Source of the DNA: Ostrea edulis
Lineage: Eukaryota
Reading direction: 5' to 3'
Length of the DNA: 64,000 nt
NCBI RefSeq assembly: GCF_947568905.1
Contig: NC_079172.1
Span: forward strand, 31,682,001 to 31,746,000
Both the position numbers and the translations under genes were made by a program. The notes under the pieces are model-generated. The model was given only the letters and a program-made list of their open reading frames with translations, was not told where the DNA came from and ran no database searches. Shown here in pieces: positions 8,948 to 33,445 of the stretch (position 1 is its first letter; the number at the start of each line of letters is the position of its first letter).

Positions 8948-8956
8948 TAGTTGTTA
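8948..8956. other. Left 9-bp target-site duplication TAGTTGTTA of the Foldback element
   Basis: Identical 9-mer at 32463-32471, immediately outside the opposite TIR. Confidence 0.9.
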
Positions 8957-11900: not shown

Positions 11901-12050
11901 CCTAAACTAGGACTTGTGCCACTCAGGTGACCGCAGGGCATTTTAGGGTATTGACCTCTCTAATAGATTCTGACCCCAAAAGGGTAAGTATAGGCACCGA
12001 TTTGGAGCACGGGGGCGCCAAATATACCGTATTTAACTATATGGAATAGG
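8957..12050 (+). repeat. Left TIR: 114-bp unique end plus 17 tandem monomers, mostly alternating ~172 bp and ~180-181 bp
   Basis: GGCGCCTAGCGCC starts at 9071, 9242, 9422, 9594, 9774, 9946, 10127, 10299, 10480, 10652, 10832, 11004, 11185, 11357, 11538, 11718, 11890. Confidence 0.95.
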
Positions 12051-13741
12051 GAAAATTTGCAAAATTTTGGCCTATGCTCGGCACTTACGGCCTTTGAGCA
12101 GGGAATAGCGATATTTGCTCATTGAAGTGGTGAATATAACGGAAACCCTTGGTCAATGGATGGCCTGATGAGTAATCAAATTCAACCTGTTTTCTTAATC
12201 ATTCTTCGAAAATCAATGCCGGTATAGCAATAACTATAGCAGTCCCTAGTTGTCTTTTCGCTCTGGCAGTTCAGGTGGTATTTAAGTTATTTAAAGGCAT
12301 AGGGTCTAAGATATTGGTGAAATTTTGTTTGTTCCAAAAAGGTGGCGAAATTTAAGATCATAACTAGAAAATCACACAAAGTTCTTCAGAATGTTCACAA
12401 ACACATTGGATACGATAGTAATTACAAAACAATTCCCTGTTCTCATTTGCCTAAACTGGTACCCTGTTGACTTTGCATCTCTTATGTTTGTGTGTAGCCA
12501 CCAATCAGCGGAGTACCAGTTTAATATAATGTCCTCCAGACAAAAATTTTATAAAGGGGTAAAACGTCAAAATGACTTCAATTTCAAAGCGATGCAGCTT
12601 TAGATAACTCATAATTAGTACTGCAAATTTGTTTTTTGGAGTTCTCTTTGCAAAATATTGTGATGTCATTTTTGAGATAAAAGATAGACCCTATGCCTTT
12701 AAAATAATTTTCTTGGGACAAAGAATTAATGATATGAAAAAAGACTTGATTGTGCTAAAAAATAATGAGACCAAAGGACAAAAAAAAAAATCTAAGAGAA
12801 TTAGAAAAAATGAGATTTCTGTAGAGAATGTGCAACTGCTAACATTCACCATGGATTCTATATTTTTGTGAAGGTAGCGGATGTAGAAAATGTGAAGCAA
12901 ATCCTCCTATTTGTATTGCTCATAAAGAGATTAATGAAAAATCACCAGGAGAATGGATTGCTCCAATAAGGTGATTTGTGGTACAGATGTCAGTTTCATA
13001 TCTTCATCTACATAATTTGCCTAATCATTTCTACCTTTGATCAAGATCAATTAAACACAAGTATCAATATAGAATATTTACACGGGTTATACGATTGCTG
13101 GTTTTGAAGACAGTGGTCCTGTCCTTTCTCTTGCTTATACCTCAAATCTCTGTTTTTGCAAATTAATCAAAAGATCAGTGCAGCTGCTATATTTACTGTG
13201 GATTTAAAATTCTATATACTTGATCCTCAATCGTTTGACAGTAAAGCTAAACGCTAATCTAAATAATGATTTTCAAACATAGATTTAGATCTGCATCCTA
13301 GCTGGGTTTTTTCTTCTTTTTTACCTTCAAGGCATCCATTTTTCCCTAGCAGCATAGGTTGATTGTTTGGGATTTAAATGGAAATATTTAGCCATTTTAC
13401 GGTGGTTAACTAAATAAAATATAATCGGTTTTGAAGAGTGTTGGAGCAGCATAGGAATCAAATGGAATATATGTATTCAGTATATAAAGCGTTTGTATTT
13501 TTGTCACAATTTGCATCTTTTGTCACCTCGTTTCAGTACTTTCAGTACTTTGATTAAAAATAAGGGCGTCCTGAATCAACCAGAATTACATGTATTTTGA
13601 GTAAGCGCTTAAAGGCCTATGCTTCCGAAATTAATCTTATTAATAAAAGTCAAGAAGGTTTTAGAAAAAATTATTCTACTCTAAATCATATTTAACTCTG
13701 CAATTTTTATAGCCTGCTCTACTCAGTAGGAAGAAACAATA

Positions 13742-13935
13742 TTTTGTGCTTTTGTAGATTTCAAGCAAGCCTTCGATACAATTCAGAGAAATGGTCTTTG
13801 GTATTACCTATTAGAAAATAGAATTAAGGGAAAATGTTATACTTTTAAACAAAATATGTATAGAAGATAAATATGATCAGTATGTCATTTGATTTTTTTT
13901 TTCTGTTTTAATGTCCGGTTCGCTAAAGTGAAAGT
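13742..13935 (+). pseudogene. Degraded non-LTR reverse transcriptase fragment
   Basis: Translates FCAFVDFKQAFDTIQRNGLWYYLLENRIKGKCY (RT 'DFxKAFD' motif), then stops; it ends where the adjacent LINE tail begins. Confidence 0.7.
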
Positions 13936-13952
13936 TTATCCCCCTTTTTATT

Positions 13953-16150
13953 CTAATAATAATAATAATGATAACCTTCATTTATCCAGGATAACACAAA
14001 TTAGCAAATAGCTAGTTTCATTGTGGTCCTGCATTAAAACATGTACACAAACATAAAATTAACATCTAAAATTAGTATCTAAACATGAATACGATATAAA
14101 AGGAAAAGGGGGAAAATATAGCATAAGACACACCTAATTAGTGATAAAATTATTACCTAAATATGAATACATGACATAAAAGGAAAGAAGAAAAAATAGC
14201 ATAAGACACACGCACACACAGTGCCATATCACAACTACATTTGGCACACCTGAACAAAAAGAGGCAATCACGATGTTTAAGTGCTACTTCTATGAAAATA
14301 TTCTATCAAATACACAGCTTTAAAAATGCCAACCGAACCAGAGCTTCGAACATTTTGAGACAGTTTGTTCCAAAGGAATGCAGAAGAGTAGCTGTATGAA
14401 CGTTTAAAATTTTCAGTTTTAGCTCTTGGTAAATATAATAAATTAGACATATAATCATTCGACCTGGTTTGGCGGCAACTCACATCTCTTGTATATTTAA
14501 ACACGTTTAGGTAATATGGCATCTGATTATTTAAAACTTTGAACAGAAAGACAACTTTTCTAAACATAAAATAATCCTTAATTGGCATCCAGTTCAAACA
14601 AGAAAATAAAAAGTCAGTAGAGGTCCTGATATCTCGAATATTTAAAAATATTCTTGCTGCCCTCTTTTGTAGCTTGAATTTTTTTTTCTAAATACAGTTG
14701 ATTTTGTACGTTACACCAGACAGTACAGCAGTAAGTTAAATGTGGAAAAACAATATTATTACAAACCGTGATAAGTGCATTTGGTGGCATAAAATAACTC
14801 ACTCTCTTAAGTACAGCAAGATTTCTTGCAATTTTCTTTGAAATAAACTCCACGTGTGCATCCCATGATAAAGTATTATCTATATAAACATCTAATAGTT
14901 TAGACTGCTTCACAAATTCAATTTGTACACCATTAAAATCTATATTTAACATTCGACATTTCCGTAACATTTGAGACGTGCCAATAAGCATACATTGTGT
15001 TTTTTGAAGATTTATACTGAGTTTATTTTTAAGCATCCATTCTGAACCCAACTTAAGGTCCTCTTGCAATTTTGATTCAATTACATCAACAGATTTATCA
15101 CTCACATCCTGTGAAGTGTCGTCTGCATACATTGTAACTGAAGAGTGTTTAAGACATTTTGGATAATCGTTAATGTACAAAATGAAAAATAATGGTCCTA
15201 AAATTGACCCCTGAGGAACTCCTAAGGATATACTTTTTTCTCTAGATAACACACCTCTCCAACTGACACATTGCTTACGATTTGTAAGATATGATTGAAA
15301 CCTTTTAAAAGCGTTGTAACAAATTCCAAAAGACATAAGTTTATGCAAAAGTACTTCATGGTTGACTGTATCAAAGGCCTTACGCAAGTCAATAAACAGA
15401 ACCCCTGTAAGCCTTCCATCGTCCATGTTTTTGAACCATTTATCAGTAAGACCATTCAACGCTGTCTCACATGAATGACTTGGCCTAAATCCAGATTGAC
15501 TATCTGTAATTTATTTGTTTGTAGATAAATATTCATAAAAGGAATTGAAGACATGCCGTTCAATAATCTTACTGACAACTGGTAAAATAGAAACTGGTCT
15601 GTAATTATTTACCAAATGCTCATCACCTGCTTCATACAATGGGACTACCCTAGCTCTTTTCCAAGCATCCACAAATGTGCATGAGGATATGGATTTGTTA
15701 AAAATAAAATGTAAAATATCACCAATATGATTAAATGACAACTTTAAGAGTTTTACAGACAAACCATTACTACCTGTGGCTTTCGAAGATGCCATTTTGA
15801 TAATTTCATTTGCAATAAATTCAATTGTAATTTCTGGAATTTTAAATGAACCTGGTGGTTCTAGATGTTCCACATACGGTAAAGAAGAATCAAAATGCTT
15901 TCCTATTTCATGTCCTACATTACAAAAGAAATCATTAAAACGGTTAGCCATTAATTCAAAAGAGGTAATGGTACCGTTGTCAGTTTGTAAATGTGTACAT
16001 ACTGTCGAATTCTGCCTCGATGGTAAACAATTCTCTATTTATATTAATGAACTAAAAGAATTTTTGATAGAAAAAATATATTGGTGGTTTACTATGATAT
16101 CTACAACTTCAAATCATTTTTGTTTTCATTGCCACACTTTTATCTGCATT
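13953..16150 (-). mobile_element. 5'-truncated, disrupted L2/CR1-clade LINE (RT and C-terminal region)
   Basis: ORFs 15511-15951, 14614-15459 and 14277-14597 carry NYRPVSILPVVSKIIE, FIDLRKAFDTV, GVPQGSILGPLFF and YADDT motifs, split by frameshifts or stops. A (TAA)n tail lies at ~13953-13970. Confidence 0.9.
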
Positions 16151-17644
16151 TCAAATTCAAGAATGGAGGGGACAAACGTGTGTTACATGTAATCAGTTCA
16201 AATTCCTAAGTGTTCTTTATTTAGCCTCGACGAAACATCGTTCTTTCCCGTAACATTGTACGGGAAAATTGTCTGTTCTGGACAGTTTCCGTTAAGTAAC
16301 GTGGTAAAAAAGAAAATGTTATCTGTAATAGACTGTTTCCGAGAAAACATAGCATTTGTATCCAAACCTTTCCGCGCCCTTCATTGTATGAAAATAGTCA
16401 CAAGCAAGTATGTGTTGAATTATTTATTTTATTTGAAAATTGAAACCTTTATGATAATTAAATGTATATACACTATCCAGCCTCCTTAAAATAGTCATTG
16501 AATATTTTATATTTCTATCATGTATTGTGATGCAACCAACCATTAAAATTCCCAATCATTACTTGCACGAAATAAAGGTCCTAAAAATCTATCAATGTAG
16601 TTCTAAGTAATTTGAATTGTTATGATAGAAATTTTAGAATTGAATAAACATTTCTTGTAACATCTACTTGCTTAGTAAATGATAAATGTGGCGCTAGTAT
16701 TCAAATCTTTCTCAAAAGATAAGTTTTTATGATAAGTTAGTTTGACTAATGTTATGCATTTTCACTAGTTCCTGCTTTAAACACATTTTTAGACCCAGAT
16801 CCTTGGAAATGGAATCCCAATAAATAGACAAGCATATCTAATACCACATTGATGTCGTTAACACAATGACAGGAACTCCTTCCTTAGTTGACCCAGCAAG
16901 ATAAATACTAACAATAAGCTGTAACAACTTTCTTCAAGCAATCGTTACATTTCTCGAAACTATGGTCATGCCACGACACTCGCCTTATAATACTGGTGCA
17001 TTCCCAAAAGTATTTTAACTATTTTAGGGAGGATTACATTTTTATTACAGGTCTAAAAAATACATGTAAAATGATACACAAGTATATACACTGTATACTT
17101 CTTTCTTCCAATTCATGATTCAACGAAAATAAATCATGATGAACACAATTCTTTTTCCCAAAGTGGAACTTGTTAAAACTTCATTTGAACTCCGCATACC
17201 GAGAAATATAGCATGCTTACTGTCTACAATATACTAATAAACCCCACAAGCAAATCTGCCGGTGTCGGGATAAGCAACCTTATTGCAAGATGGCTGAAAG
17301 ATCAAATTTTAACATTAATACTTTGAATGTTCTCCATCCTAAACTGAGTTTGTCTATACAGATATAGAAAAAAACGAATGTAAGAATTCTAAGAATGAGC
17401 ATTCAAAATATCCATGCTTAAATGTCTACCTATGAGCCGGTTTTTGTTCCAAAAATGTACATGCGATTTTGACCCCCCTTCACATTTTATTACAATGATT
17501 TTGAAATTAACGATTGTCATATACAATTGAATACTCCTCTTTGACTAACTGCACTCTGGTTATTCTCCGACTGTCCTTGACGAGCGGACATTCTCTTTGC
17601 AAGTGAATAAAGTTCCCGAACGCTTAACACCTACCGATAGATGT

Positions 17645-17838
17645 TGGACTGGTGTTTCGCTTCGCTACCAAGAGGTCTCGGGTTCGATTATCGATGCCGA
17701 CACCACGTCCAACCTAAGACTTTTAACATAAGTAGTGCGTGTTTTTCCGCCAAGCGCCCGGAATGAAAACCGAAGGTTATGGGTATTCGGACATGACATT
17801 TAACCAGGATATCTCTGTCACGGTAGGTGTTGGCATGG
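17645..17838 (+). mobile_element. Degenerate tRNA-derived SINE, 5' part
   Basis: B-box-like GGTTCGATTA followed by CCTAAGAC...AGTAGTG..TCCGCCAAGCGC...GGACATGAC, homologous to the SINEs at 24248 and 59546. Confidence 0.65.
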
Positions 17839-17883
17839 TAATTCAGAACGAAAGAAATGTAAATCTGCGAAGCATAAATAGTT

Positions 17884-20800
17884 TTAATACTCAATTGTTC
17901 CACTCAGAAGTTCTCTAACTATCTGCATACGCATGTAATGCGCAAGATGCTTCAGAATTGGAAACCTTCTCTCAATCAAAATAGCTTTGGCCATCTCACA
18001 TACATACACCCCACAACTGACACCGTCTTCTTGCAATGGGAATGTTGAATCACTGCAATAGTCGACATATTTCCATTCCCTCATTTCAAACTTCTTTCCA
18101 TACCTTACCATGTATTCATAAGCAAGGTACCTACAAATCTGAAATAGAATTACACTTGTAGTGTCGCCTTTGGAATCGCAATAGTATATAGTTTTCTTAG
18201 GGACGTTTATTGCCAGCAAAATCCAGTGAATATTACGTATATTAACCGGAATGAATATTTGCGATTTTTCGAACCAGTTCACAGTTTTGCTTTGGACTTC
18301 AAACATGTCACATTTTAACACCTTGGAACTACCGTCAACAATAACTTTGTGACTGAACCAACCAGCATCAACCATATGCACGTCTGAATTTGTATTATTT
18401 GATAGCATATCCATATAACAATTTATATCGTCACTAGATAGCCAGTACGTGTCATTACACATCGATTTTAAAGCAGACACCTCTACTGGATACCGTTTTT
18501 GAAAGCGTCCACAAAATTGATTAACTTGAGCAGCTGAAACGTTTTGCTCTGGAATGACCATCGTTTGAATTTCAGACAAATTGTCACATTTTTTGTCGAT
18601 TATCTTCACAGATATCCCCTTTTGCATTCTATCATAACAAGAGAGTAATATCTGCATATTTTTCATTCTTTCCTCCTTTACTTCTTCAGGTACATCACTC
18701 TCACCATAAATCAACAGTTTATTGTTGTCGTTGAATACTAATCTAACTGCACCATTCTCAGATACAAGCATCGTAGATATCTTATACTGCAGACTGACAA
18801 GGGGCATAGTTGTTGTTACTAAGCCCTCCAGATCAAAGTCATAACAAACATCACCTTTAATGTTCATTTCATCTGATGTAATCATCATCGTAGTGGGTAG
18901 CCAAGATACGTATGATGTGCATTTTGCATCTTTTGCAGAACAGGACGGACAACTCAACTGAATTTGAAACGATTTAGCTATGTCATGTAGATCAAATGAA
19001 GCAGGCTTTAGCACTGCGTAACGTGTTTTACACAAAATGTTCTCTCTTTGGCAAGACGTGCAGCTGACAACCACCTCTGCTGCATACTTAAAATGACATC
19101 CCAATTGTGTCTGCGACGAATTATTTTCAAAGAGAGTCCCCAAAAGCCGTTCAACAAATATGGAAACTTCATTCGACGTTTTGAAATTGCTTCTTTTTGC
19201 TACAAGACTTTGCAACTTCTTCAGTGAGGATTGGTTCACGCTTCTGTCTAATTTTATACTTTGCAGTAAATCTGCAGTATATCTTTTAGTGTTCTTGTTG
19301 GTTGGTAAGGACGAAATAGCTGCTTTGAATGCTTTTGTTTTACCTACACACTGAAGAAGAGAAGTCGTATACTCTGGTAGACTAGGTTCTTTTCTGTCAT
19401 ACAAAAGAAAGTAGCAGGAGCTTCCTACCTCTGACTCTGTACCAACAGATAGCTTTGTGTCACTAATTTTCTTCAATGAATTGTCCTCAAAGACAAAGGC
19501 TGTATAGTGTCCCGATTGGGTAGAGCGACCATGATGGCATACTGCACTTTTTAAAGTATACTGTACGTTCTGAAGATTGTCCGTGTAGTCGGTCAAATCT
19601 ATTAATCTATCAGGTTTGATCTCCGATACATTCTTTCGATATTGACACCTTCCAATATCATACTCAAACCTTTTCACCGTTAAAACTAAAGTACTAGGGG
19701 CTTCTCTCAATTTTTGATTCAAATCTAATAATCCTCCACATCGGCAATTTTCAATAATATCGTGTTCAAAATAATCTTTTAATAATTCTTTAACAGACAT
19801 TTTGATACCTGGTTTGTTTGGTATTGTTAGCGCCAAGTTTTGAACATATGAATCAATTTTTTCAGTTTTGTTCCCACAGTCTAAACACGTGAAGAACTTT
19901 ATGATGTTAAGTCTTTCACCAATGTCCATAGCCATTGGAGATATCGCTTTCATATAAAATTCATTTGCATCTTGTTGTTCCCTGTAATTTATTCCTAGAT
20001 CACCTACTGCTAAACCAAGATTGTTCAAAGCTGTTTGTACAAGTGGTGTAGGAACTTTTTCACCAGCTGACGCTCTGCTTAAAATGTGTCTGAACACGTC
20101 GTAAAAAGCCTCCTTCATATCATCTATTTTCTCCTTGCTGATAGCAATGGGTGCATTCTCAGAATAATCAAGAAATGATTTTGCCATGTTTGTAACACTG
20201 ATGGATTGTATCGTGGCATTGAACCAACAAGTTGCACCGAGATTGTCAATAGGACAAAATGTATTGCAAGAAGTGCTCTGTAACGTCGCACCCTTGGATT
20301 CGAGGGAAGACAGGGAGTGTATCGGGGCCTTTTGAAACCTACCTACATTATCGAGGAAATCTTCCGACTTCTGTCGCTTATTCCAGTTCTCTGTTATTGT
20401 TGTAACATTTCTTTTTCGTTTTAATTTTCCAACAGATTTCAAGGTGTCCTTTGCTGCACATCTCTGAATCTGAACCGTTTGCCTCATTAATTCCTCTGCA
20501 AAGTCGTCAATGCGACGGTTTTTCTTTCCATCCAATCCAATATACTTCAAAATACGAAATCTGTTTTCTATGGTTCCCTGTGTAGTACACTCTGAAAGCG
20601 TTGGATGGGTTTTGAGAAGAATACTTCCCCATAGTGGTAAGATCGGTATATATCGATTTAAAATTTGTTGAAGTAGAACTTCAGAATGGTAGGGATTTTT
20701 AATCCCAGAAGCATTTTCAACTACTGTGCACGATGCTGTATTGAAAATATCCAATCCCCATGTTTTAAATGGAGAAAAAGTAGCTAAATTTAGAAAATCT

Positions 20801-23688
20801 TCCTCAGTAAATCTACTGGATGCAGAAAGGTTAGTTTGTTCGGTGGTACTTTCATATTCAATGGAGTCAGCATTGCTAGATGTGGATGTATCAAACGTAT
20901 TGACCTTATTGACAAGTCGATCGATATACGCCTTATTTCTATCGGTAATTGTTTTGGACTGCAGTGTAACAACTACATCGTGGAAGATTTCTCTTGCCTC
21001 AGTGAGGGAGCTACAATTTAAAAGTAAACTAACCATGTACATGCCTAGTTTTAAATTTCTTTTGTAGTGCAGTGTACAAAATCTTCGCACTTTCTTCATG
21101 AAATGGCTTTTGCATAAGTGAACTAGTGTTTTATTTGAATACGCACGTATGTCATTTTTGCCAGAACAATATTCCCATGCCCGGAGAAGGAAGTCTTGCA
21201 ATGTTTCGGTGTTAAATTCTTTTAATGCAGCAATAATGAAAACCCAAGATTCATCGCTGATGATAATTTTAGGTTTTGAAATGTTATTATAGCCATACAT
21301 TTTTTTTTCGGCATTCCTGAACCTTGTTATCCAGTCTTGCACACAAGGAAGGCTCTGATCTTCAGAAAGCATCGCAGAAACTGGGATCCCCATCTTGCCA
21401 TGTACCGGGTGTTTAACTGCAAGTTCGTAATACAGGTACTGCTTTCCATTCTCTCGTCGGACAACACTACCTGTAGCATCCCAAAACAGAGGATTCTTGT
21501 TTGACAACTTATGATAATACTGAAGTCCCTCTTCTGACCAAAACAAAATATAACGTGGCTTTGCAGAAATTTTTTGAATAAATCCAAACCCTTCCCTTTT
21601 TTGATCTTCCATACTTTTTAACAGAGATTGTAGAATATCTTTGTCTTTTCTCCCGACGTGGCGGCCTTCCGTGGCAATTTGTCTGTATACATGGGCGTCT
21701 GTCCCCAACCCATCACAATTACCCGATATTAATTGTGAAGTTTTTTTGTCGTGAAACTTTTCTAAGAAGTGTTTCAAAGGTTTCGCACCATTCCTAAACC
21801 TTTCTTTCAATACCTCTCTCTCCGTTTTTCGAATGGGCCGTGCATGCTCTTCCGTTGTTTTGTGCTTAACCTTCCCCTTATATTGAACCTGAACAAGACT
21901 TTTGTTCTTCATTACTACTTCTACTTCCACGGGACAATCAATGAACTTGCAGTGCGCTTTGCATTTAAAATATGGAGTGTCGCGCTTTTTTCGCCTAATT
22001 TGAGCGCTGCTTATCCTATGTTCATCAAATATGAACACGCAGTGTTCGTTTGACGTCTGTAATCCTTTAATAAAAATGTGTTGCCATTGTCCTTTTTTAA
22101 AATATCTGCCATTCTTAATGTTTTCTAAATGTGCACTGTCTTCGGCTGAAATGACGAAAGTGGTTAAAGATGGGATGTCAGTCGTAAAGTATTCGGGAAT
22201 ACTGCAGTGCAAGATGTCTTCTAAATCTGATCTGGACATTGGACATAAGTTGTTTCCTTCTACGTTTTTCTTTACATCACTGTATTGCTCGGGGCGGCCT
22301 GCAGAAGGAAGAACCTTAAGTGAATCAGTTTCGTCAAAAGCACGATCGTTAACTTGCTTAGACGATGCGGAAGAATGGGGTGAACGGTGTAAATCAATTT
22401 TGGGGGACACAGAAGGCGATGACGGGATATCTAAATGTGTATTGTTTTCTGGCGTATTCATGAGGTCAGGATGTTCATGCAGATTATGTGACTGATCTTG
22501 ATCAGCAGTTTTCATATGGTTCTGATTGATATGTTCAGACTCTGCAGGATATGCAACATCTGTAGAAATCATGGAAATGTTTGACTTTGTATCTTTGACA
22601 GACATCTCTAATTTATTGATTGTTGCGTGCGCAAAATCAACTGCTCGCTTTCTCATACTTCTTAAAGATGTTCGATTTTTTACATCAATTTTGTCCAATT
22701 CTAGAAGACATCGAGTTAATTTCTCCGATAATTCCCTGTACTGAAAACTATTTTCCGACCCGGAAAAAAGTGCTATTTCGCCATCAATGTGTCTAATTTC
22801 TCTATCAACCGTATTAATAGAACCTTCGATACTTTTCATCTCTTGTAAAACAAACGTGTCAGGGACAATACGAATACCCTTTACAAGAAAAAGGAATTCG
22901 CCATTGTTACATGCCTTCCTACCACAACGAAACTTTATATTTTTCCCAGTAACGCCATCTTCCAATGTAGGTAGTCTTAAACATGTGCAATGATACCATA
23001 TTTTGCAATTTTCGCATTCAACCATTCTACCCTCATCTACAGTATCATAATTAAGACCACAAATACAGTGATCACTTGTGGATGCTGTTTTGATAGTATG
23101 TGGGGTATAGGGTGTCTTTCGCTTTCTTAACTTTCTCGAAGAGCGAGTTAAATCATCGTCGCTTTTCTTCTCTCTCTCGTCAGAAGAAATATCTATAACG
23201 TTAATCGTTTTATTTCTTTTTAACGAAAGACGACCTCGTTTCAAAGAGCGATCATTTTGTCGGTCTTCAATACCTTGGTAACATTCTAGATTTACCACCT
23301 CATTTGCTTTCTTTACAGCACTTTTAGACATTTCTTCTGGTTTGGTATCACGGACATTCCCTCTGTTAGAATTCCATATAATGCTCAAATATTTTCTGTT
23401 CTTAGAGGAGTTGGACCATTTCAAATAGTTGGCCGCCAGACCATATGGACCCTCCTCGGAATGATCTCCATTGTTAGAGGGATTACAAAATTTTCTCAGC
23501 GCCGTTCCAATAGCCAGATAGTCTAATTTGTGATTTTTTATTTTCCATTGACCACTCTGTCTCTTCATTTTGCAAACTTGTGAAGATAATGAGTGCAAGA
23601 AAGTGATTGATGAAATATCTATAGATACGATCCTTCCGGAATAATACAAACGTAATATACATGTAATATTACATGTGCACATGCACAT
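17884..23688 (-). CDS. Multidomain MULE/NOF-like transposase: PHD finger - BAG - C2H-type Zn finger - DDE transposase - USP (C19) - inactive USP-like - Ulp1/SENP (C48). True start is uncertain (upstream exon possible)
   Basis: Uninterrupted 1934 codons. PHD: CICG...CENCKIWYHCTC...CGRKAC (~22909-23070). BAG: YRELSEKLTRCLLELDKID...RKRAV (~22605-22835). Transposase: FWDATGSVV, IISDES, LCKSH, TIENRF (~20557-21490). USP: NLGATCWFNATIQ and HHGRSTQSGHYTAF (~19390-20255). Ulp1: WLSSDDIN, IHWILL, YCDS, QEDGVSCGVYV (~17930-18460). Confidence 0.9.
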   Translation of the reverse strand: MCMCTCNITCILRLYYSGRIVSIDISSITFLHSLSSQVCKMKRQSGQWKIKNHKLDYLAIGTALRKFCNPSNNGDHSEEGPYGLAANYLKWSNSSKNRKYLSIIWNSNRGNVRDTKPEEMSKSAVKKANEVVNLECYQGIEDRQNDRSLKRGRLSLKRNKTINVIDISSDEREKKSDDDLTRSSRKLRKRKTPYTPHTIKTASTSDHCICGLNYDTVDEGRMVECENCKIWYHCTCLRLPTLEDGVTGKNIKFRCGRKACNNGEFLFLVKGIRIVPDTFVLQEMKSIEGSINTVDREIRHIDGEIALFSGSENSFQYRELSEKLTRCLLELDKIDVKNRTSLRSMRKRAVDFAHATINKLEMSVKDTKSNISMISTDVAYPAESEHINQNHMKTADQDQSHNLHEHPDLMNTPENNTHLDIPSSPSVSPKIDLHRSPHSSASSKQVNDRAFDETDSLKVLPSAGRPEQYSDVKKNVEGNNLCPMSRSDLEDILHCSIPEYFTTDIPSLTTFVISAEDSAHLENIKNGRYFKKGQWQHIFIKGLQTSNEHCVFIFDEHRISSAQIRRKKRDTPYFKCKAHCKFIDCPVEVEVVMKNKSLVQVQYKGKVKHKTTEEHARPIRKTEREVLKERFRNGAKPLKHFLEKFHDKKTSQLISGNCDGLGTDAHVYRQIATEGRHVGRKDKDILQSLLKSMEDQKREGFGFIQKISAKPRYILFWSEEGLQYYHKLSNKNPLFWDATGSVVRRENGKQYLYYELAVKHPVHGKMGIPVSAMLSEDQSLPCVQDWITRFRNAEKKMYGYNNISKPKIIISDESWVFIIAALKEFNTETLQDFLLRAWEYCSGKNDIRAYSNKTLVHLCKSHFMKKVRRFCTLHYKRNLKLGMYMVSLLLNCSSLTEAREIFHDVVVTLQSKTITDRNKAYIDRLVNKVNTFDTSTSSNADSIEYESTTEQTNLSASSRFTEEDFLNLATFSPFKTWGLDIFNTASCTVVENASGIKNPYHSEVLLQQILNRYIPILPLWGSILLKTHPTLSECTTQGTIENRFRILKYIGLDGKKNRRIDDFAEELMRQTVQIQRCAAKDTLKSVGKLKRKRNVTTITENWNKRQKSEDFLDNVGRFQKAPIHSLSSLESKGATLQSTSCNTFCPIDNLGATCWFNATIQSISVTNMAKSFLDYSENAPIAISKEKIDDMKEAFYDVFRHILSRASAGEKVPTPLVQTALNNLGLAVGDLGINYREQQDANEFYMKAISPMAMDIGERLNIIKFFTCLDCGNKTEKIDSYVQNLALTIPNKPGIKMSVKELLKDYFEHDIIENCRCGGLLDLNQKLREAPSTLVLTVKRFEYDIGRCQYRKNVSEIKPDRLIDLTDYTDNLQNVQYTLKSAVCHHGRSTQSGHYTAFVFEDNSLKKISDTKLSVGTESEVGSSCYFLLYDRKEPSLPEYTTSLLQCVGKTKAFKAAISSLPTNKNTKRYTADLLQSIKLDRSVNQSSLKKLQSLVAKRSNFKTSNEVSIFVERLLGTLFENNSSQTQLGCHFKYAAEVVVSCTSCQRENILCKTRYAVLKPASFDLHDIAKSFQIQLSCPSCSAKDAKCTSYVSWLPTTMMITSDEMNIKGDVCYDFDLEGLVTTTMPLVSLQYKISTMLVSENGAVRLVFNDNNKLLIYGESDVPEEVKEERMKNMQILLSCYDRMQKGISVKIIDKKCDNLSEIQTMVIPEQNVSAAQVNQFCGRFQKRYPVEVSALKSMCNDTYWLSSDDINCYMDMLSNNTNSDVHMVDAGWFSHKVIVDGSSKVLKCDMFEVQSKTVNWFEKSQIFIPVNIRNIHWILLAINVPKKTIYYCDSKGDTTSVILFQICRYLAYEYMVRYGKKFEMREWKYVDYCSDSTFPLQEDGVSCGVYVCEMAKAILIERRFPILKHLAHYMRMQIVRELLSGTIEY

Positions 23689-24247
23689 ATAAATTCATAT
23701 CACAAATTTGACCTTGAAAACTTAAAGTAATAGGTTTAATTAAGAATATAATGACTGGCCGCAAATCAAAACTATATGAATAAAACGATTTCTTGCAAAG
23801 TGTTGTGTCTCGCTAAATTGGAGTCTAACTATGCCTAAGTATTGATAAATCAAAGTTGTCGTTATGTCGTACCAATAAATTTCTACTTCGTCCGACGAGT
23901 TGTAAAGACAATGGGGATATATTTCATCAGACTGGATCAAAAAATTTATATCCTGATTAAAACCTTGTTGTTGTTGATTTTGTTGTTGCTATTTGTAAAT
24001 ATCAAGAATTAGATTCTAGTACGAATTAACAAACAACAATGGTGGATCTAGCGGTGAATACAATTCCCTTGCGGAGAGTGAGGGATTTCATATTTCTATG
24101 TTGTCAAAATTACTTCGTAAAACCAAGTGGCATAAGTTCCCAACCATGAACTTCATATAAAATATACGGCTTCAAAAATTTAAGCATTTCAATATGTTTT
24201 AATAAATGACCTTGAACATAAAACGCTCTCAAGGTTATCATTTTCTT

Positions 24248-24575
24248 CGCGGTAGCTCAGTGGCAGAACGGTCACTTCGTAACCGAAGGTGTTGAGTTTG
24301 AGCCCAACTCGTGCCATGGCGGCCAAACCTAAGACATTGAAATGGGTAGTGATTGCTCCTTCGCTAAACTAGTGAGAATCACTTGTCTATCGGATATGAC
24401 CTTATAAACGGAGGTCCCGTGTCGCGGCAGACGTTGGCACGATAAAGAACCCTTACTGCTACGGCCTTGAACACTAAGCATGGATCTAAATTTGTGGTAC
24501 TTCACCAACAGCTGGTGATGTTTCAATATAAGTGGAAGATTATCGACGGGACGTAACACAACCAACCAATCAATC
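24248..24575 (+). mobile_element. Full-length-like tRNA-derived bivalve SINE
   Basis: A-box-like GTAGCTCAGTGG, degenerate B box, core CCCGTGTCGCGGCAG..GTTGGCACGATAAAGAACCC, and a 3' CGGGACGTAACACAACCAACCAATCAATC tail. Confidence 0.8.
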
Positions 24576-26039
24576 ATATTACACCTCATTTGTCTAGCCT
24601 AATAGCATAGTATTAGTAACTAGTTAGTCAGTGTGCCGACTATCTATAATCATATATCTTTATACATATAACCATATAACCATGATAACGATATTATTGT
24701 TAAGTCCGCGGATCGAATAACATGATGCCAAAAGTAACCTGTAGGTGTCCAATAAGTTGACAATTACAGTCCATTATTTTAATAAAGGACAAAAAAATGT
24801 CCAAAATACTGTTAAACCTTAACAATAGCTAGCGCATATGTCCAGCGCTTGAAAATGGTAAGTAATTGTCACCTTATTGGACGGTGCCAGGTAAATTAAT
24901 CAACGTGTTAGACAGGTAGACTAAAACATGAGAAGACGCCGCAATTGCTAAACAGAAACAATTCCTTTATTGGAAAGTCACTGATATACCTAAACGATAA
25001 TTTTCTCTTAGTATATTCATCTGCTCCAACTTAAAGATTCAAAAATTTCATTTAATTCTCCTAAAGTAAAGTAAATTTTATTTAAAGTCGGGACTATATA
25101 CATTCAACAAATCAAACACAAGCTCTATAGAGCCTTTTAACCGACTATCACATTCAAGTATATCAAAGACACATAGCATGCATGTACACATATACACAGA
25201 CATATCACAGATAACAAAAGAATACAAAACTTTCATGCAAGAATATACAAAAATATACAGATACGAAAGCATAAGACTAAGAGGAAGAAATAAAATACTA
25301 CAAGCAAGAGTATATGTATGTAAAAATCATCATTAAATTTCAAGCTAATTAGCTATGTTTGCTGTTTCAAGTTTCCTTTTGGGGTCAGAGCAATAATTGA
25401 TATATTGCGCGCATTAATTCATTTGATGAGAGCAATAATTGATTTAATGCGCGCATTAATTCAATTAAAGACCAAAAAAAAACAAAAACAAAAAAACACC
25501 GTACGGTTGCTCCACGGATCACTGAATGTGGGCGGAGCTTATCCATGGTCAATGTTATTTACCTGGAATTTACCTGGCTAAGAGAACGGTTGTTGTGTAT
25601 ATTTTTATGATATACACAGGAAATTTCTCAGGTTATTACAAATTATGCTTAGTGTCTTGATTTGTGCAAAAAAAAAAAAAAAATAATAAAAAAAAAAAAA
25701 ATAAAAAATTCTACCTACATGCATTCCGCATTTCTATTTCCCGTAAACCTTCAAACTTGGTCATATTTATGTATTGCAAATGACAGGTTTAGCCCATTTC
25801 TAAACCTTTGCTTTTTAAAACTGCTAATTAAATTGTTATATATCGTATATAAATATTTTCCTAAATATGATATTACCCGGCGTTTCCAGGCACTTCCTGG
25901 TGTCCTGAGAGTTCGCGGTGTCGTGGGTGTAGTAGGTAAAATATCCATGTTTCGAGAGAATGAATAAATCCAAGTAGATCTGTGTACATGTACAACCAAA
26001 TGAAGAATGATCAAGATACCCCTCAATATGGGCCGTCTG

Positions 26040-26099
26040 TAGCTGTAGTGTTTGCGTAATGGTGGTATCCCAAACAGAAGCTGACACGAAGTCTACCCC

Positions 26100-26139
<40 letters not shown>

Positions 26140-26479
26140 GGGTTTCTGTGGACGTAGTGTTTGTGTAAAGATGGCATCCCAAACAGAAACTGACACGAAG
26201 TCTACACCCCCTCCTCTCTCTCTCTTTAGGGTTTCTGTGGACGTAGTGTTTGTGTAACGATGGTATCCCAAACAGAAGCTGACACATAGCTAGTCTCCCC
26301 CCTTTCTCTCTCTCCCTTACTCTCAATCATTGACTAAATGAGTAATTATTGTCATACGTATGCAACACTATTGCCATGCCATATTATTTCATCTATATTA
26401 TTGCTACAGTTTTACACATTTCTCTCTCTCTCTCTTTCTTTATAAATATAAAACTGTGATAAATTATAAATAGCTCAAT

Positions 26480-26537
<58 letters not shown>

Positions 26538-26648
26538 TCTTTATAAATAGAAAACCGGGATAAATTATAAATAGAAATATCTCAATAACTCTCTTTCTCT
26601 CTCTATAAATATAAAGCTGTGATAAATTATGAATAGAAATATCTCAGT

Positions 26649-26727
<79 letters not shown>

Positions 26728-26770
26728 AAGCCGTGATAAATTATAAATAAAAATATCTCAATAACTTATT
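26040..26770. repeat. Compound repeat: three ~85-115-bp units (GTAGTGTTTG..ATCCCAAACAGAAGCTGACAC) and four units (AAAACTGTGATAAATTATAAATAG..CTCAATAA) interleaved with (CT)n tracts
   Basis: Direct reading. Confidence 0.85.
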
Positions 26771-27757
26771 TATGCTTTTTTACTATTGTTTGATTTCTGA
26801 TTGTGTAATTTATAATAATCCATGTGGTATCTCAAACAGAAGCATTTTTTTAACTACTGTAACAGTTTTACGCATGGGCAATATAACCATTATACATGTT
26901 GATGTGCTGCGCCAATAAAGAATTGTTCATGTTTTTATAAATATAAAGCCACAATAAATCATTAATAGAAAATATTCCAATAACTTATGTTTGTTTGGTT
27001 GTTGTTTTTTTTATATTATTGTTTGATTTCTGATTGTTTAATCTATAATACATGTATAAAGATGGAGAGAGAAAATACGATGATAAATTGCATTGTATAG
27101 GGGACGTTAGAAATTAAATATTCTAGGTGCGAGTCAATGCTATCAAAACTCAGGTATACTGGGGCTTTCGAGATCTGAAGACTGCCGGTCATCATTAGCC
27201 ATGATTGTTATCAAAACATCTTTCTGAGGTAGCTGTAGACCATGGTCTTTGCAAACGTCAATCAACCTAAGCTCTATTGTTAAAAGTTTGATTGACCAGC
27301 GGCTTATCATTGATCGCAACACAGGTAAAATTTGGGGGCGTTAACTTAAAGTTGGGTCTTTAAAGAGAGCAATAATTGAATTGATGATATCTTCAAATAA
27401 TTGAAGATATTTTCAATTATTTGAGTTTATGTTAATTTGGCGCTCCATAGAACAGCAGCATTGAAAAAATACCAAATATTGTGCGATGAAATTCCTAAAT
27501 ACATATCTAAATACATTATGTCCATCATCTTTCAAAACTTACTTTTAATTAGGTGTACTTGATATAAATCTGTTATTTTTATATCAATATCTACAAATAG
27601 TGGAAGTGCACATGTCACAAAATTCTGTGGAATGATGAATAGTACGTTCTGCTAAATTTTCAAATGGAGTATCAAGAATTTCAACAATTCCGTTCTGAAA
27701 TAGAACATCCTCCAATGATCTAGAAATAACAATTTATTACGTTGGGGAGGGGGTCAT

Positions 27758-28163
27758 CAGTGGCGGATTTAAGGTAAATCGTGGTATCTTGTTTAGAAAA
27801 ATGTAAACAATAAAACACGCAATAATTCATTCCTCTCTTAGAGCAATAAATGACAAAATCTTTTGATTTTTGAATTACTTTTATTGGGGGAACTTACATT
27901 TTTTCTAAAAACCCTTAAAATTGGCATCATATTGTTGATTTCCCTCCATCAAAAATGACAGAGAATAGTAAAAATTACTACATAGAAGACATATTTGAAG
28001 CCCAATAAAATCTGTAAAATCCAGGAGCTTCCGGGGCTTCGCCCCCTGGGTCTCCACCAGGGCTTAGCCCTGGACCCACTGGAGGTTTCAAGGCGCCCTC
28101 CCCCCCCCCCCCCCTTGCATCATAAAATTGCGCCCCTAACCGCAATTCCTGGATCCACCCCTG
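27758..28163. mobile_element. Small non-autonomous TIR element (CAGTGGCGGAT...ATCCACCCCTG) flanked by GTCAT on both sides
   Basis: Imperfect TIRs, a 5-bp direct repeat at 27753-27757 and 28164-28168, and internal homology to 57670-58029. Confidence 0.75.
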
Positions 28164-28596
28164 GTCATGCTAATAAAGTGATTGTAAAACGTGGTACTTT
28201 GCATAAAACTCCTTTGGTGTTTATACATAGAATTAATACGGCATTACTGAAAAAATCCACATTTGATAAATACTATTTTTTCTCTCATTGTATGATTGAA
28301 AAATATTTATGATTTTTACAAAATTCATAACAAAGACACGTGTCTGCGCAAACCACATGGGTCCTCAAACAGGGCCCATTTCATTTCAAACATCAAACAC
28401 TGGTCTATCGTGAATTCATTGACACACGCCAAATATTCGTACGAATTAATGTACATCAGATTTGGCACGGTGTGAAAGGGATAGTTTCGCACTATAGACC
28501 CGGTCAACTTTCTCAAAAAATAAAAATATCTCATATTTAAAGTAATATTACCCGTGTAAAAATTTATCAAATGATTTTGGGAAACGTGTCAAGTAT

Positions 28597-31500: not shown

Positions 31501-32462
31501 TATTTGGCGCCCCGTGCCCCAAATCGGTGCCTATACTTACCCTTTTGGGGTCAGAATCTATTAGAGGGATCAATACCCTAAAATGCCCTGTGGTCACCTG
31601 AGTGGCACAAGTCCTAGTTTAGGCGCTAGGCGCCGTATTTAGACCCCTATCGCATATAGTTAGATAGGGTATATTTGGCGCCCCCGTGCCCCAAATCGGT
31701 GCCTATACTTACCCTTTTGGGGTCAGAATCTATTAGAGGGGTCAATACCCTAAAATGTCCTGTGGTCACCTGAGTGGCACAAGTCCTAGTTTAGGCGCTA
31801 GGCGCCGTACCTAGACCCCTATCGCATATAGTCAAATAGTAAAACTAGGGTATATTTGGCGCCCCCGTGCCCCAAATCGGTGCCTATACTTACCCTTTTG
31901 GGGTCAGAATCTATTAGAGGGATCAATACCCTAAAATGCCCTGTGGTCACCTGAGTGGCACAAGTCCTAGTTTAGGCGCTAGGCGCCGTATTTACACCCC
32001 TATCGCATATAGTCAAATAGTAAAACTAGGGTATATTTGGCGCCCCCGTGCCCCAAATCGGTGCCTATACTTACCCTTTTGGGGCCAGAATCTATTAGGA
32101 GTGTCAATGCCCTAAAATGCCCTGTGGTCACCTGAGTGGCACAAGTCCTAGTTTAGGCGCTAGGCGCCGTACCTAGACCCCTATCGCATATAGTCAAATA
32201 GTAAAACTAGGGTATATTTGGCGCCCCCGTGCCCCAAATCGGTGCCTATACTTACCCTTTTGGGGTCAGATTCCATTAGGGGGTCAATGCCCTAAAATGC
32301 CCTGTGGTCATCTAAGTGGCACAAGTCCTAGTTTAGGCGCTAGGCGCCGTATATTGACAGTACTTTTTTGTCGGGTTCGTTATACGTACGTTTTCTAAGC
32401 GATAAATATTAGGAAAAATCCTTATTGGTCGCTAGCTTATTGTTCGCTAGCTTGACTTAGGC
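28597..32462 (-). repeat. Right TIR: about 21 tandem 172/180-bp monomers (inverted relative to the left array) plus the 114-bp unique end
   Basis: Reverse complement of the left array; the terminal monomer shares diagnostic variants (CACTTAG, TAATGGAATC) with the left terminal monomer. Confidence 0.95.
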
Positions 32463-32471
32463 TAGTTGTTA
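32463..32471. other. Right 9-bp target-site duplication TAGTTGTTA
   Basis: Identical to 8948-8956. Confidence 0.9.
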
Positions 32472-33210: not shown

Positions 33211-33445
33211 AGTAGTAAGGGGGACAGTACACAGTCAGTATACAGTCAAGATGACGTCATGGGTTTTTCCCCACATAGGTCATTGAGGTCAGGGGTGAGT
33301 ACACAGTCAAGGGGGAGTATACAGTCAAGGGGGAGTATACAGTCAAAGGGGAGTATACAGTCAAGGGGGAGTATACAGTCAAAGGGGAGTCTACAGTCAG
33401 AGGGTGAGTCCACAGTCCAAGGGTGAGTCCACAGTCAAGGGTAGG
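33211..33445 (+). repeat. Maverick left TIR containing 18-bp iterons (GAGTATACAGTCAAGGGG) and a TGACGTCA site
   Basis: Inverted match to 53585-53819. Confidence 0.95.

What the first reader, a model, noticed from the sequence alone, without database searches (positions are those of the whole stretch)
17884..23688. Transposase fused to a chromatin reader, an Hsp70 co-chaperone domain, a deubiquitinase and a deSUMOylase
Seen: one polypeptide has PHD (C4HC3 pattern), BAG, MULE DDE core, USP with intact Cys box (NLGATCWFN) and His box (GHY..F...ISD), and Ulp1 with intact H-D-Q-C. Established: Ulp1-type proteases occur in plant KAONASHI MULEs and in Zisupton, and SUMO and ubiquitin pathways silence transposons (e.g. 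SUMO-dependent piRNA silencing in animals). Inference: this protein may read histone marks at target sites and locally strip both ubiquitin and SUMO, giving a self-contained anti-silencing and anti-degradation module. The USP+Ulp1+BAG+PHD combination on one transposase is not one I recognise.
Basis: partly seen in the sequence, partly recalled or inferred. Interest (0 to 1): 0.9.

Follow-up and report, generated by a model that had tools for sequence, protein, structure and literature searches.

The report
Foldback transposase carrying ubiquitin and SUMO proteases
The long gene is real: it is the intact transposase of a complete 23.5-kb Foldback-type jumping gene in an oyster genome, fused to enzymes that remove ubiquitin and SUMO tags, a design common in sequence databases but not described in the papers I could search.

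Summary
Observation confirmed. Window 17884-23688 (-) is one uninterrupted 1934-codon ORF. Its likely start is M41, which gives 1894 aa.

Pfam supports four domains:
- USP/UCH, E 4e-26
- Ulp1/C48, E 1e-17
- BAG, E 1e-10
- PHD, marginal at 23.3-24.8 bits against a cut-off of 24

Pfam does not recognise the central "MULE core". An AlphaFold model of it (pLDDT 90) best matches the Drosophila FB-NOF (Foldback) protein, then FAR1/FHY3, ZSWIM and IS256. D737, D812, C859-x2-H862 and E1041 are nearly invariant in 53 relatives.

New here:
- A second, catalytically dead USP-like domain lies between the USP and Ulp1 domains.
- The ORF sits in the loop of a complete Foldback element, 8957-32462. Its arms are 3.1 and 3.9 kb of 172/180-bp satellite. 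Each terminus carries two copies of a 15-bp motif. A 9-bp target duplication (TAGTTGTTA) flanks it.
- The architecture is not unique. At least 24 divergent relatives keep both protease active sites, and a relative is multi-copy with frameshifted copies.

The anti-silencing function is plausible but untested. No RNA evidence for a single transcript was obtained. Verdict: a new variant of a known kind, of moderate to high interest.

The parts
8948..8956 (.). Left copy of the 9-bp target-site duplication TAGTTGTTA
   Evidence: This 9-mer occurs only twice in the 64-kb window, at the two outer edges of the inverted repeat.
8957..12051 (+). Left Foldback arm. 8957-9066 is a unique terminus holding two tandem 15-bp motifs (8968-8997). 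9067-12051 is 172/180-bp satellite, about 17 units.
   Evidence: Tandem and inverted repeats. Terminus 99% identical to the right terminus. The motif TTATTGKTCGCTAGC is found only at the two termini, 4 matches against 0.22 expected.
12052..28596 (.). Loop (middle domain) of the element, 16.5 kb. It holds the transposase ORF, nested debris and small repeats.
   Evidence: No inverted repeat of its own at the inner junctions: local alignment score 21 against a shuffled mean of 20.8. Only one copy of the ORF in the window.
14277..15951 (-). Broken reverse-transcriptase fragment, a nested retroelement remnant that is not part of the transposase
   Evidence: ORF 14614-15459 hits RVT_1 at E 2.9e-22. 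The neighbouring ORFs lie in other frames.
17884..23688 (-). Transposase ORF, 1934 codons. The likely CDS is 17884-23568, starting at M41 (1894 aa).
   Evidence: Start inferred from the alignment with P0001.
22924..23067 (-). PHD finger, residues 208-255 (C4HC3)
   Evidence: Pfam PHD at 23.3-24.8 bits. ASH1L at E 8e-6 and PHF2 at E 8e-5.
22603..22818 (-). BAG domain, residues 291-362
   Evidence: Pfam BAG at E 1.3e-10, 42 bits against a cut-off of 23.4. BAG5 and BAG4 at E 1e-6 to 1e-5.
21829..22140 (-). WRKY/FAR1-like zinc-finger DNA-binding domain, about residues 517-620. Nearly invariant residues: W535, C550, C580, C585, H609.
   Evidence: A3 conservation. The model shows a four-stranded sheet. 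Matches to NOF, FRS and FHY3 start at model residues 5-9, so they include their N-terminal DNA-binding domains. Pfam WRKY only at E 0.32.
20401..21591 (-). DDE catalytic core with an inserted helical domain, about residues 700-1096. Key residues: D737, D812, C859-x2-H862, E1041.
   Evidence: Nearly invariant in 53 relatives. AlphaFold pLDDT 90. Matches: NOF at E 3e-23 and TM 0.72, K. lactis alpha3, FAR1/FHY3, ZSWIM and IS256; ISCth4, P element and RAG1.
19399..20250 (-). Active-looking USP deubiquitinase domain, residues 1147-1430. Key residues: C1154, H1394, D1410. Zinc ribbon: C1268, C1271, C1315, C1317.
   Evidence: Pfam UCH at E 3.7e-26. Z 28.6 to USP46, and 27-28 to USP12 and USP2. Residues invariant in 24 sequences.
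18619..19368 (-). Second USP-like domain, about residues 1441-1690, with no Cys box and no His box. It is predicted to be catalytically dead.
   Evidence: Confident model with a helical thumb followed by a beta palm and fingers. hhalign against the family's own USP domain gives probability 96.3% and E 1.5e-9 over 169 columns. C1543, C1546 and C1583 are invariant.
17959..18447 (-). Ulp1/SENP (C48) protease domain, residues 1748-1910. Key residues: H1821, D1838, Q1886, C1892.
   Evidence: Pfam Peptidase_C48 at E 1.1e-17. SENP1/2 at E 1e-13. Conservation.
28597..32462 (-). Right Foldback arm. 28597-32352 is satellite, about 21 units. 32353-32462 is the unique terminus, with two 15-bp motifs at 32422-32451.
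   Evidence: Arm-to-arm stretches of up to 728 nt are 96-99% complementary.
32463..32471 (.). Right copy of the 9-bp target-site duplication TAGTTGTTA

Best explanation
SHOWN.
- The ORF is the transposase of a complete, probably autonomous Foldback (MULE-NOF type) DNA transposon spanning 8957-32462.
- The element has inverted arms of 3.1 and 3.9 kb built of 172/180-bp satellite. Each outer terminus is about 110 bp of unique sequence carrying two 15-bp repeats. A 9-bp target duplication flanks it.
- The protein, from N to C: a conserved N-terminal motif, a PHD finger, a BAG domain, a WRKY/FAR1-like zinc-finger DNA-binding domain, a Mutator-superfamily DDE core, a USP with an intact triad, a dead USP-like domain, and a SENP-like Ulp1 with an intact triad.
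- The USP and Ulp1 modules and their catalytic residues are conserved across a deep clade of NOF-like transposases.

INFERRED (mechanism).
- The zinc finger binds the terminal 15-bp repeats, and the DDE core carries out cut-and-paste with a 9-bp staggered target cut.
- The PHD finger tethers the enzyme to chromatin. Its closest solved relatives are, from general knowledge, H3K4me2/3 readers.
- The BAG domain recruits Hsp70.
- The C-terminal module removes ubiquitin and SUMO from proteins near the bound element. The dead USP may act as a ubiquitin-binding unit.
- The most likely benefit to the element is protection from SUMO- and ubiquitin-dependent chromatin silencing, and/or from removal of the transposase complex.
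- I put about 0.85 on the identity and architecture, and about 0.35 on the anti-silencing role specifically.
For: ORF and domains:
- ORF. Pfam. PDB sequence matches.
- Core fold: pLDDT 90. The best Swiss-Prot model is the NOF-FB 120.7-kDa protein at E 3.2e-23, TM 0.72, query residues 9-567. Next come K. lactis alpha3, FAR1/FHY3/FRS, ZSWIM and IS256. PDB: ISCth4, P element, RAG1. An ESM Atlas cluster named after NOF gives TM 0.69.
- DDE plus CxxH are nearly invariant in 53 sequences.

The element:
- Arms. Termini and TSD. The 15-bp motif occurs only at the termini. No inner TIRs.
- The terminal 45-55 nt are conserved with the boundary of a relative's repeated unit in another genome.

Family:
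- 3094 representatives of the core. Full-length relatives with UCH plus C48.
- Both protease active sites are invariant in 24 sequences that are 17-36% identical to this one.
- USP and/or Ulp1 are present in 19 of 27 rows of one half of the core tree, against 2 of 26 in the other half.

Transposon behaviour:
- A relative has at least 3 copies, 98-99.7% identical, in one assembly. One is intact (2185 aa) and the others are frameshifted.
- Contigs from other individuals of this species show variant copies with frameshifts, and a shared breakpoint at 20491.

Dead USP. NLS-like basic clusters at residues 185 and 1090.
Against: - No transcript evidence. The candidate RNA runs are of unknown kind and give only fragmented contigs.
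- No biochemical data exist for any domain.
- Pfam's MULE model does not hit this protein.
- The loop carries nested debris (an RT fragment), so this copy need not be mobile today.
- Relatives do not show satellite-built inverted arms within 10 kb on either side of the ORF (Pinctada L001; L003-L005). I could not find the second terminus of the multi-copy relative within 21.8 kb downstream.
- BAG is confined to the closest subclade, so it is not essential to the family.
Confidence: 0.75

Rival explanations
1. Domesticated host gene. A transposase-derived protein has been recruited as a chromatin-associated deubiquitinase/deSUMOylase and is no longer part of a mobile element.
For: - Only one copy in the window.
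- The single named relative is annotated as a plain gene, 'Ubiquitinyl hydrolase 1', in Pinctada imbricata, with no TIRs within 10 kb.
- Long conservation of an intact frame.
- Known domesticated MULE transposases (FAR1/FHY3, ZSWIM, alpha3) are among the structural matches.
Against: - The copy here lies between matched inverted arms with a 9-bp TSD.
- The DDE triad is conserved.
- A relative is multi-copy with frameshifted copies. Variant and frameshifted copies exist within this species.
- Terminal sequences are co-conserved with the protein across two genomes.
- Flanks are not conserved between species.
Confidence: 0.05
2. Passenger domains. USP, Ulp1, BAG and PHD are host fragments captured Pack-MULE-style. 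They happen to be in frame and do nothing for the element.
For: - TEs of several classes capture such domains. UCH, C48 and OTU are reported in Helitron-like elements (PMC11417382). Ulp1 is reported in plant MULEs, with its function unknown (PMC13317346).
- BAG is restricted to a shallow subclade.
Against: - Catalytic residues of both proteases are invariant in 24 proteins whose C-terminal halves are only 17-36% identical to this one.
- The module marks a deep clade on the core tree.
- Both domains are predicted as complete, well-packed folds: pLDDT 84, and Z 28.6 for the USP.
Confidence: 0.07
3. Self-processing polyprotein. The two cysteine proteases cut the 1900-aa precursor into separate transposase and accessory proteins, as viral papain-like and adenain-type proteases do.
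For: - Both folds are used for polyprotein or capsid processing in viruses and Mavericks (general knowledge).
- Long low-complexity linkers separate the modules.
Against: - The protein has a single Gly-Gly. It lies inside the USP zinc ribbon and is not conserved.
- No ubiquitin-like or SUMO-like domain was detected.
- The closest solved relatives are cellular isopeptidases: SENP1/2 and USP2/12/46.
Confidence: 0.08
4. The eraser module acts on DNA repair rather than on silencing. By removing ubiquitin or SUMO from repair factors or histones at the excision or insertion break, it biases repair in the element's favour.
For: - Cut-and-paste leaves double-strand breaks whose repair is governed by ubiquitin and SUMO (general knowledge).
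- A distant member of the same transposase family carries a Macro domain instead, an ADP-ribose reader/eraser that is also a DNA-damage signal.
- The best structural USP matches include USP1/12/46.
Against: No direct evidence. Fold similarity among USPs does not reveal substrate. This reading is compatible with the best explanation, not exclusive of it.
Confidence: 0.2

Closest known systems
Drosophila melanogaster FB-NOF (Foldback) element and its 120.7-kDa NOF protein (UniProt P16320)
   Same: - Best structural match of the core: E 3.2e-23, TM 0.72 over query residues 9-567.
- Long inverted arms made of tandem repeats around a coding loop.
- A 9-bp target duplication. The 9-bp figure for FB is from general knowledge.
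   Different: - About 15% sequence identity.
- The arms here are built of 172/180-bp units and run to 3-4 kb.
- The protein here is almost twice as long and carries PHD, BAG, USP, a dead USP and Ulp1.
- I could not read the NOF sequence itself to see what its C-terminal 390 residues hold.
Plant VANDAL/KAONASHI MULEs (Ulp1 domain fused to the anti-silencing factor VANC; PMC13317346)
   Same: - A Mutator-superfamily element that carries a conserved Ulp1 protease domain.
- An anti-silencing role is established for VANC. The role of its Ulp1 domain is stated to be unknown.
   Different: - There, Ulp1 sits in a separate accessory gene, not on the transposase.
- Those elements lack TIRs and have no USP, BAG or second USP.
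- The host is a plant, and the transposase belongs to another clade.
Zisupton (fish) and Ginger2 DNA transposons with Ulp1 (PMC2836005 for Ginger; Zisupton from general knowledge)
   Same: A C48 protease encoded by a cut-and-paste element.
   Different: - The transposase superfamily differs: KDZ-like for Zisupton, integrase-like for Ginger.
- No Pfam hit to those families here.
- Neither has a USP.
Helitron-like elements carrying OTU, UCH or Peptidase_C48 domains (PMC11417382)
   Same: Recurrent, positionally stable capture of deubiquitinase and Ulp1 domains by a transposon protein.
   Different: - Those are rolling-circle elements with a RepHel protein, not a DDE transposase.
- The paper notes UCH and C48 among 20 stably included domains. 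It does not describe them together on one protein.
Cellular USP2/USP12/USP46 and SENP1/SENP2
   Same: - Catalytic folds and triads are the same: Z 27-29 for the USP, E 1e-13 for SENP1/2.
- The fingers zinc ribbon is retained.
   Different: About 20% identity, fused to a transposase, and followed by a degenerate USP copy. Substrate is unknown.

Membership tests
Mutator superfamily (MULE / IS256-like DDE transposases) | RNase-H-fold catalytic core with a D, D, E triad and a C/DxxH motif between the second D and the E | tested here: met
   D737, D812, C859-x2-H862 and E1041 are present in at least 90% of 53 relatives. The model matches FAR1/FHY3, ZSWIM, alpha3 and IS256 and ISCth4.
Mutator superfamily (MULE / IS256-like DDE transposases) | Match to the curated Pfam MULE model PF10551 | tested here: not met
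   No hit for this protein at E up to 10. Only 1 of 53 relatives hits, at E 4.7e-4. This shows sequence divergence. The fold evidence is not affected.
Mutator superfamily (MULE / IS256-like DDE transposases) | N-terminal WRKY/GCM1-type (FAR1-like) zinc-finger DNA-binding domain | tested here: inconclusive
   A four-stranded sheet with conserved C550, C580, C585 and H609. Structural matches to FRS and FHY3 start at their N-terminal domains. Pfam WRKY reaches only E 0.32.
Mutator superfamily (MULE / IS256-like DDE transposases) | Target-site duplication of 8-10 bp | tested here: met
   A 9-bp TAGTTGTTA at both edges, with no other copy in the window.
Foldback (FB-NOF, RepeatMasker class MULE-NOF) | Long terminal inverted repeats composed of tandem subrepeats around a central loop | tested here: met
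   Arms 8957-12051 and 28597-32462 of 172/180-bp units, 96-99% complementary.
Foldback (FB-NOF, RepeatMasker class MULE-NOF) | NOF-like transposase | tested here: met
   NOF is the top Swiss-Prot structural match, and the top ESM Atlas cluster is named after NOF. This rests on structure. Sequence identity is about 15%.
USP deubiquitinases (peptidase C19) | Cys box and His box with a Cys-His-Asp/Asn triad, in the thumb-palm-fingers fold | tested here: met
   Pfam UCH at 92.7 bits against a cut-off of 23.9. N1149, C1154, H1394 and D1410 are invariant. Z 28.6 to USP46.
USP deubiquitinases (peptidase C19) | Isopeptidase activity on ubiquitin | not testable with these tools
   Needs an enzyme assay.
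Ulp1/SENP proteases (peptidase C48) | His-Asp-Cys triad with the oxyanion Gln | tested here: met
   Pfam at 65.1 bits against a cut-off of 20.7. H1821, Q1886 and C1892 are invariant in 24 sequences. D1838 is invariant in the 5 closest. SENP1/2 at E 1e-13.
BAG co-chaperone domain | Three-helix BAG domain above the Pfam threshold | tested here: met
   42.1 bits against a cut-off of 23.4. BAG5 and BAG4 at E 1e-6 to 1e-5.
BAG co-chaperone domain | Residues that contact the Hsp70 nucleotide-binding domain | not tested
   No structure-based comparison was made.
PHD finger | C4HC3 zinc-binding signature and a match to the PHD profile | tested here: met
   The signature can be read in the sequence. 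Pfam gives 23.3 bits for the whole protein and 24.8 bits for the N-terminal piece, against a cut-off of 24. ASH1L PHD at E 8e-6.
PHD finger | Histone-tail reading (aromatic cage) | not tested
   The Trp of the W-Y-H motif is present, and the nearest solved fingers are H3K4me readers by general knowledge. No binding test was done.
KAONASHI / Zisupton | Their own transposase clades: plant VANDAL MULE for KAONASHI, KDZ for Zisupton | tested here: not met
   No Pfam hit to KDZ or plant MULE models. The core's nearest kin is NOF. The resemblance is by analogy only.

The most novel reading that the evidence does not exclude
The transposase acts as a self-targeted epigenetic eraser. Its zinc finger tethers it to the element's own termini and its PHD finger tethers it to chromatin. 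There it strips both SUMO and ubiquitin, with the dead USP holding ubiquitin chains and BAG-recruited Hsp70 remodelling the complex. This would keep satellite-built Foldback elements from being locked into SUMO-dependent heterochromatin. The wider NOF family would then have repeatedly swapped in different 'eraser' domains (USP, Ulp1, Macro) as a general counter-defence strategy of animal DNA transposons.
Probability: 0.25. Interest if true: 0.85.

Novelty: new variant of a known kind. Interest (0 to 1): 0.62.

Why it matters
SUMO and ubiquitin are central to transposon silencing in animals, yet no animal transposon is known to fight back with its own erasers.

This is an intact, complete element with defined ends, defined candidate binding sites and a defined protein. 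It is also a large and deep family in which two protease active sites have been kept on the transposase. That turns a vague idea into direct experiments: enzyme assays, catalytic-dead mutants in a transposition assay, and chromatin profiling.

It also gives Foldback elements, whose autonomy has long been debated in Drosophila, a clear autonomous example outside insects. It links satellite arrays to a specific transposase. It points to a large transposase family that Pfam's MULE model does not detect.

Tried and rejected
- Pfam on the central 655 aa and on 53 core relatives gave nothing usable. A PDB sequence-profile search with the core gave nothing.
- A search for short TIRs close to the ORF found none. 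The real inverted repeat lies 5-6 kb away on each side.
- The 6.1-6.7-kb Logan contigs of the closest relative (L002, L006) have no terminal inverted repeats. I cannot tell whether they are transcripts or assembly units.
- Flanks of relatives share nothing with the window's loop by blastn or tblastx.
- I walked out from the multi-copy relative in assembly ERZ25069870. The upstream boundary was found, with a terminus like the window's. The second terminus was not found within 21.8 kb downstream. That region instead holds 372-bp satellite arrays in one orientation. So the Foldback architecture is not demonstrated for that relative.
- RNA evidence: runs returned for kind 'rna' are of unknown type. 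Laid contigs are short, show no splice joints and span no full transcript. Expression is therefore unproven.
- A nested-insertion reading, in which the loop is a separate TIR element inside a spacerless foldback, was rejected because the loop ends share no inverted repeat.
- The self-cleavage reading was weakened because there is no conserved Gly-Gly.
- One literature search was wasted by a loose term setting.
Full report
**1.

The ORF listing gives a single ORF at 17884-23688 on the minus strand, 1934 aa. The translation has no internal stop. Pfam on the whole protein finds:
- UCH at 1147-1430, E 3.7e-26.
- Peptidase_C48 at 1748-1910, E 1.1e-17.
- BAG at 291-362, E 1.3e-10.
- PHD at 208-255, E 6.4e-5, 23.3 bits against a gathering score of 24.

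Scanned alone, the N-terminal piece gives PHD at 24.8 bits and BAG at 45.3 bits. Independent sequence searches of solved structures agree:
- SENP1/SENP2 at E 1e-13, and USP2/USP21 at about 2e-8.
- BAG5 and BAG4 at 1e-6 to 1e-5.
- ASH1L and PHF2 PHD fingers at 8e-6 to 8e-5.

The first 40 codons are probably leader. The closest full-length relative starts at the residue aligned with M41.

**2. The central domain.**

Pfam does not recognise residues 480-1135. A profile of five relatives finds nothing among PDB sequences. The same profile against 1.84 billion cluster representatives finds 3094 proteins at E up to 1e-3, and 337 at E up to 1e-30.

In a 53-sequence alignment, the following are present in at least 90% of rows (renumbered to the full protein):
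- D737, D812, C859, H862 and E1041.
- W535, C550, C580, C585 and H609.

AlphaFold2 on that alignment gives pLDDT 90 and pTM 0.82. Fold searches give:
- **Swiss-Prot models.** The best match is the 120.7-kDa protein of the Drosophila NOF-FB element: E 3.2e-23, TM 0.72, query residues 9-567. It is followed by K. lactis alpha3, FAR1/FHY3/FRS, ZSWIM proteins and IS256-family transposases.
- **PDB.** ISCth4 (an IS256-family transposase), the P element transposase, RAG1 and Transib.
- **ESM Atlas.** The nearest cluster is named after NOF. Its members carry Peptidase_C48 in 45% of cases and PHD in 34%.

More exactly, it belongs to the Foldback/NOF clade.

**3. The enclosing element.**

No short TIRs lie near the ORF. 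Two arrays of 172/180-bp repeats, 9067-12051 and 28597-32352, lie in inverted orientation. Stretches of up to 728 nt are 96-99% complementary.

The inverted symmetry continues about 106-110 bp outward into unique sequence at 99% identity. It stops at 8957 and 32462. There the 9-mer TAGTTGTTA stands on both sides, at 8948-8956 and 32463-32471, and it occurs nowhere else in the window.

Each terminus carries two tandem copies of TTATTGKTCGCTAGC. These four are the only matches in the window, against 0.22 expected. The loop ends share no inverted repeat of their own, so the loop is not a nested TIR element.

This is the anatomy of a Foldback element with a 9-bp TSD, 23,506 bp long. I reached it independently and confirm it. 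Other notes report many spacerless foldbacks built of a 177-bp satellite with 9-bp TSDs in this genome. I did not check those.

The loop also holds a broken RT fragment.

**4. Relatives and architecture.**

- Full-length searches find proteins 25-46% identical over the whole length with UCH and C48, with or without BAG and PHD. Only one is named, from Pinctada imbricata. It is intronless there too. Its frame is open 756 nt upstream of the annotated start, and that upstream stretch includes a PHD finger.
- Domain HMMs built from the alignment show transposase-USP-Ulp1 in about 30 of the fetched proteins, in many separate clusters.
- In 24 C-terminal halves that are 17-36% identical to this one, N1149, C1154, H1394 and D1410 (USP) and H1821, Q1886 and C1892 (Ulp1) are invariant.
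- On a core tree, USP and/or Ulp1 occur in 19 of 27 rows of one half (SH-aLRT 99) and in 2 of 26 rows of the other. Many of the rows without them are truncated gene models.
- More distant members carry C48 alone, Ulp1 before USP, or a Macro domain.
- AlphaFold DB cluster representatives with this core are auto-named "USP domain-containing protein", [quoted passage not shown] and "PHD-type domain-containing protein".
- BAG is confined to the closest subclade.

**5.

The C-terminal 800 aa fold with pLDDT 84. The USP part aligns to USP46, USP12 and USP2 at Z 27-29.

Residues of about 1441-1690 form helices followed by a beta palm and fingers. hhalign of this region against the family's own USP domain gives probability 96.3% and E 1.5e-9 over 169 columns. 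The His-box position is occupied by non-catalytic residues and there is no Cys box. It is a second, inactive USP-like domain, and it keeps conserved cysteines.

**6. Transposon or host gene?**

- In assembly ERZ25069870 a relative occurs on at least three contigs, 98-99.7% identical over more than 25 kb. One copy is intact (2185 aa) and the others are split by frameshifts.
- The homology between two of these copies ends 16.8 kb upstream of the ORF. The last 45-55 nt before that end align with the window's termini, repeated motif included. Termini and protein are therefore co-conserved across genomes.
- I did not find that relative's other end. 372-bp satellite arrays begin about 10 kb downstream.
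- Public runs labelled with the window's species, and "oyster metagenome" runs, hold 69-95% of the ORF's words.
- Laid contigs show variant copies with frameshifts, and a breakpoint at 20491 shared by three runs.

All of this fits a transposon family and argues against a single-copy domesticated gene.

**7. What is not shown.**

- Runs offered as RNA are of unknown kind. Their contigs are short and show no joints. A single transcript is therefore unproven.
- No conserved Gly-Gly exists that would suggest self-cleavage.
- Function is inference. The zinc finger plausibly binds the 15-bp terminal repeats, and the DDE core cuts and pastes.
- The PHD finger's nearest solved relatives are H3K4me2/3 readers by general knowledge, which points to chromatin tethering. 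BAG would recruit Hsp70.
- The USP, dead-USP and Ulp1 module would remove ubiquitin and SUMO locally. The long conservation of both active sites shows that the element benefits from them, but it does not show how.

**8. Comparison with what is known.**

- Ulp1 is known on plant VANDAL/KAONASHI MULEs. There it is fused to the anti-silencing factor VANC, and the function of the Ulp1 part is unknown (PMC13317346).
- OTU is listed for a Hydra MuDR, and PHD for Rehavkus (PMC6446971).
- UCH, C48 and OTU are reported as stably captured domains in Helitron-like elements (PMC11417382).
- MULE-NOF is a routine RepeatMasker class.
- I found no paper describing a Foldback or NOF transposase fused to USP plus Ulp1, or any with BAG.

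Verdict: real, intact and well defined. It is a new variant of a known kind, not a new category, and worth experimental follow-up.

Noticed in passing
window 33288-53742: A Maverick/Polinton-like element lies about 820 bp to the right of the Foldback's right TSD. It has 18-bp iteron arrays in inverted orientation at 33288-33441 and 53592-53742, and large ORFs between them. Other first-stage notes cover it.
   Followed up: no
window 25387-25470 and 62690-63527: A 21/42-bp repeat (unit AGAGCAATAATTGA...GCGCGCATTAATTCA) inside the Foldback loop recurs as larger arrays 37 kb away, in both orientations. It is probably a separate small repeat family.
   Followed up: no
window 14277-15951: A degenerate reverse-transcriptase remnant nested in the loop, split over several frames.
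   Followed up: partly
window about 23344-23535 (residues 52-115): A conserved N-terminal motif of about 60 aa (LDY..IG..LR ... GPYG ... W.NS..NR.YL..W..NRGNV) is shared with P0001, P0004 and the Pinctada upstream frame. It has no family assignment.
   Followed up: partly
window 20491: Contigs of three independent runs leave the window sequence at the same base, with the same loose end (ACGCAAGATCGCGACTACTTTT). This points to another copy in the species that is truncated or interrupted there.
   Followed up: no
P0136 (distant NOF-like transposase, 1721 aa): It carries a Macro domain (E 8e-9) at its C-terminus instead of USP and Ulp1. This suggests that different modification-eraser domains have been swapped onto this transposase family.
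   Followed up: no
P0003 (ENA, 2034 aa): An internal duplication of the end of the DDE core plus the USP domain within one predicted protein. It is either a tandem duplication or an assembly or annotation artefact.
   Followed up: no
L001 9245-10720 (Pinctada imbricata): The annotated protein starts too late. The frame is open 756 nt further upstream and encodes the N-terminal motif and the PHD finger. The BAG-region DNA is tandemly duplicated with a 441-bp period, 1.9 copies.
   Followed up: partly
L016 8660-20186 (relative, assembly ERZ25069870): More than 10 kb of 372-bp satellite begins about 10 kb downstream of the relative's ORF, all in one orientation. Whether it is part of that element is unresolved.
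   Followed up: partly
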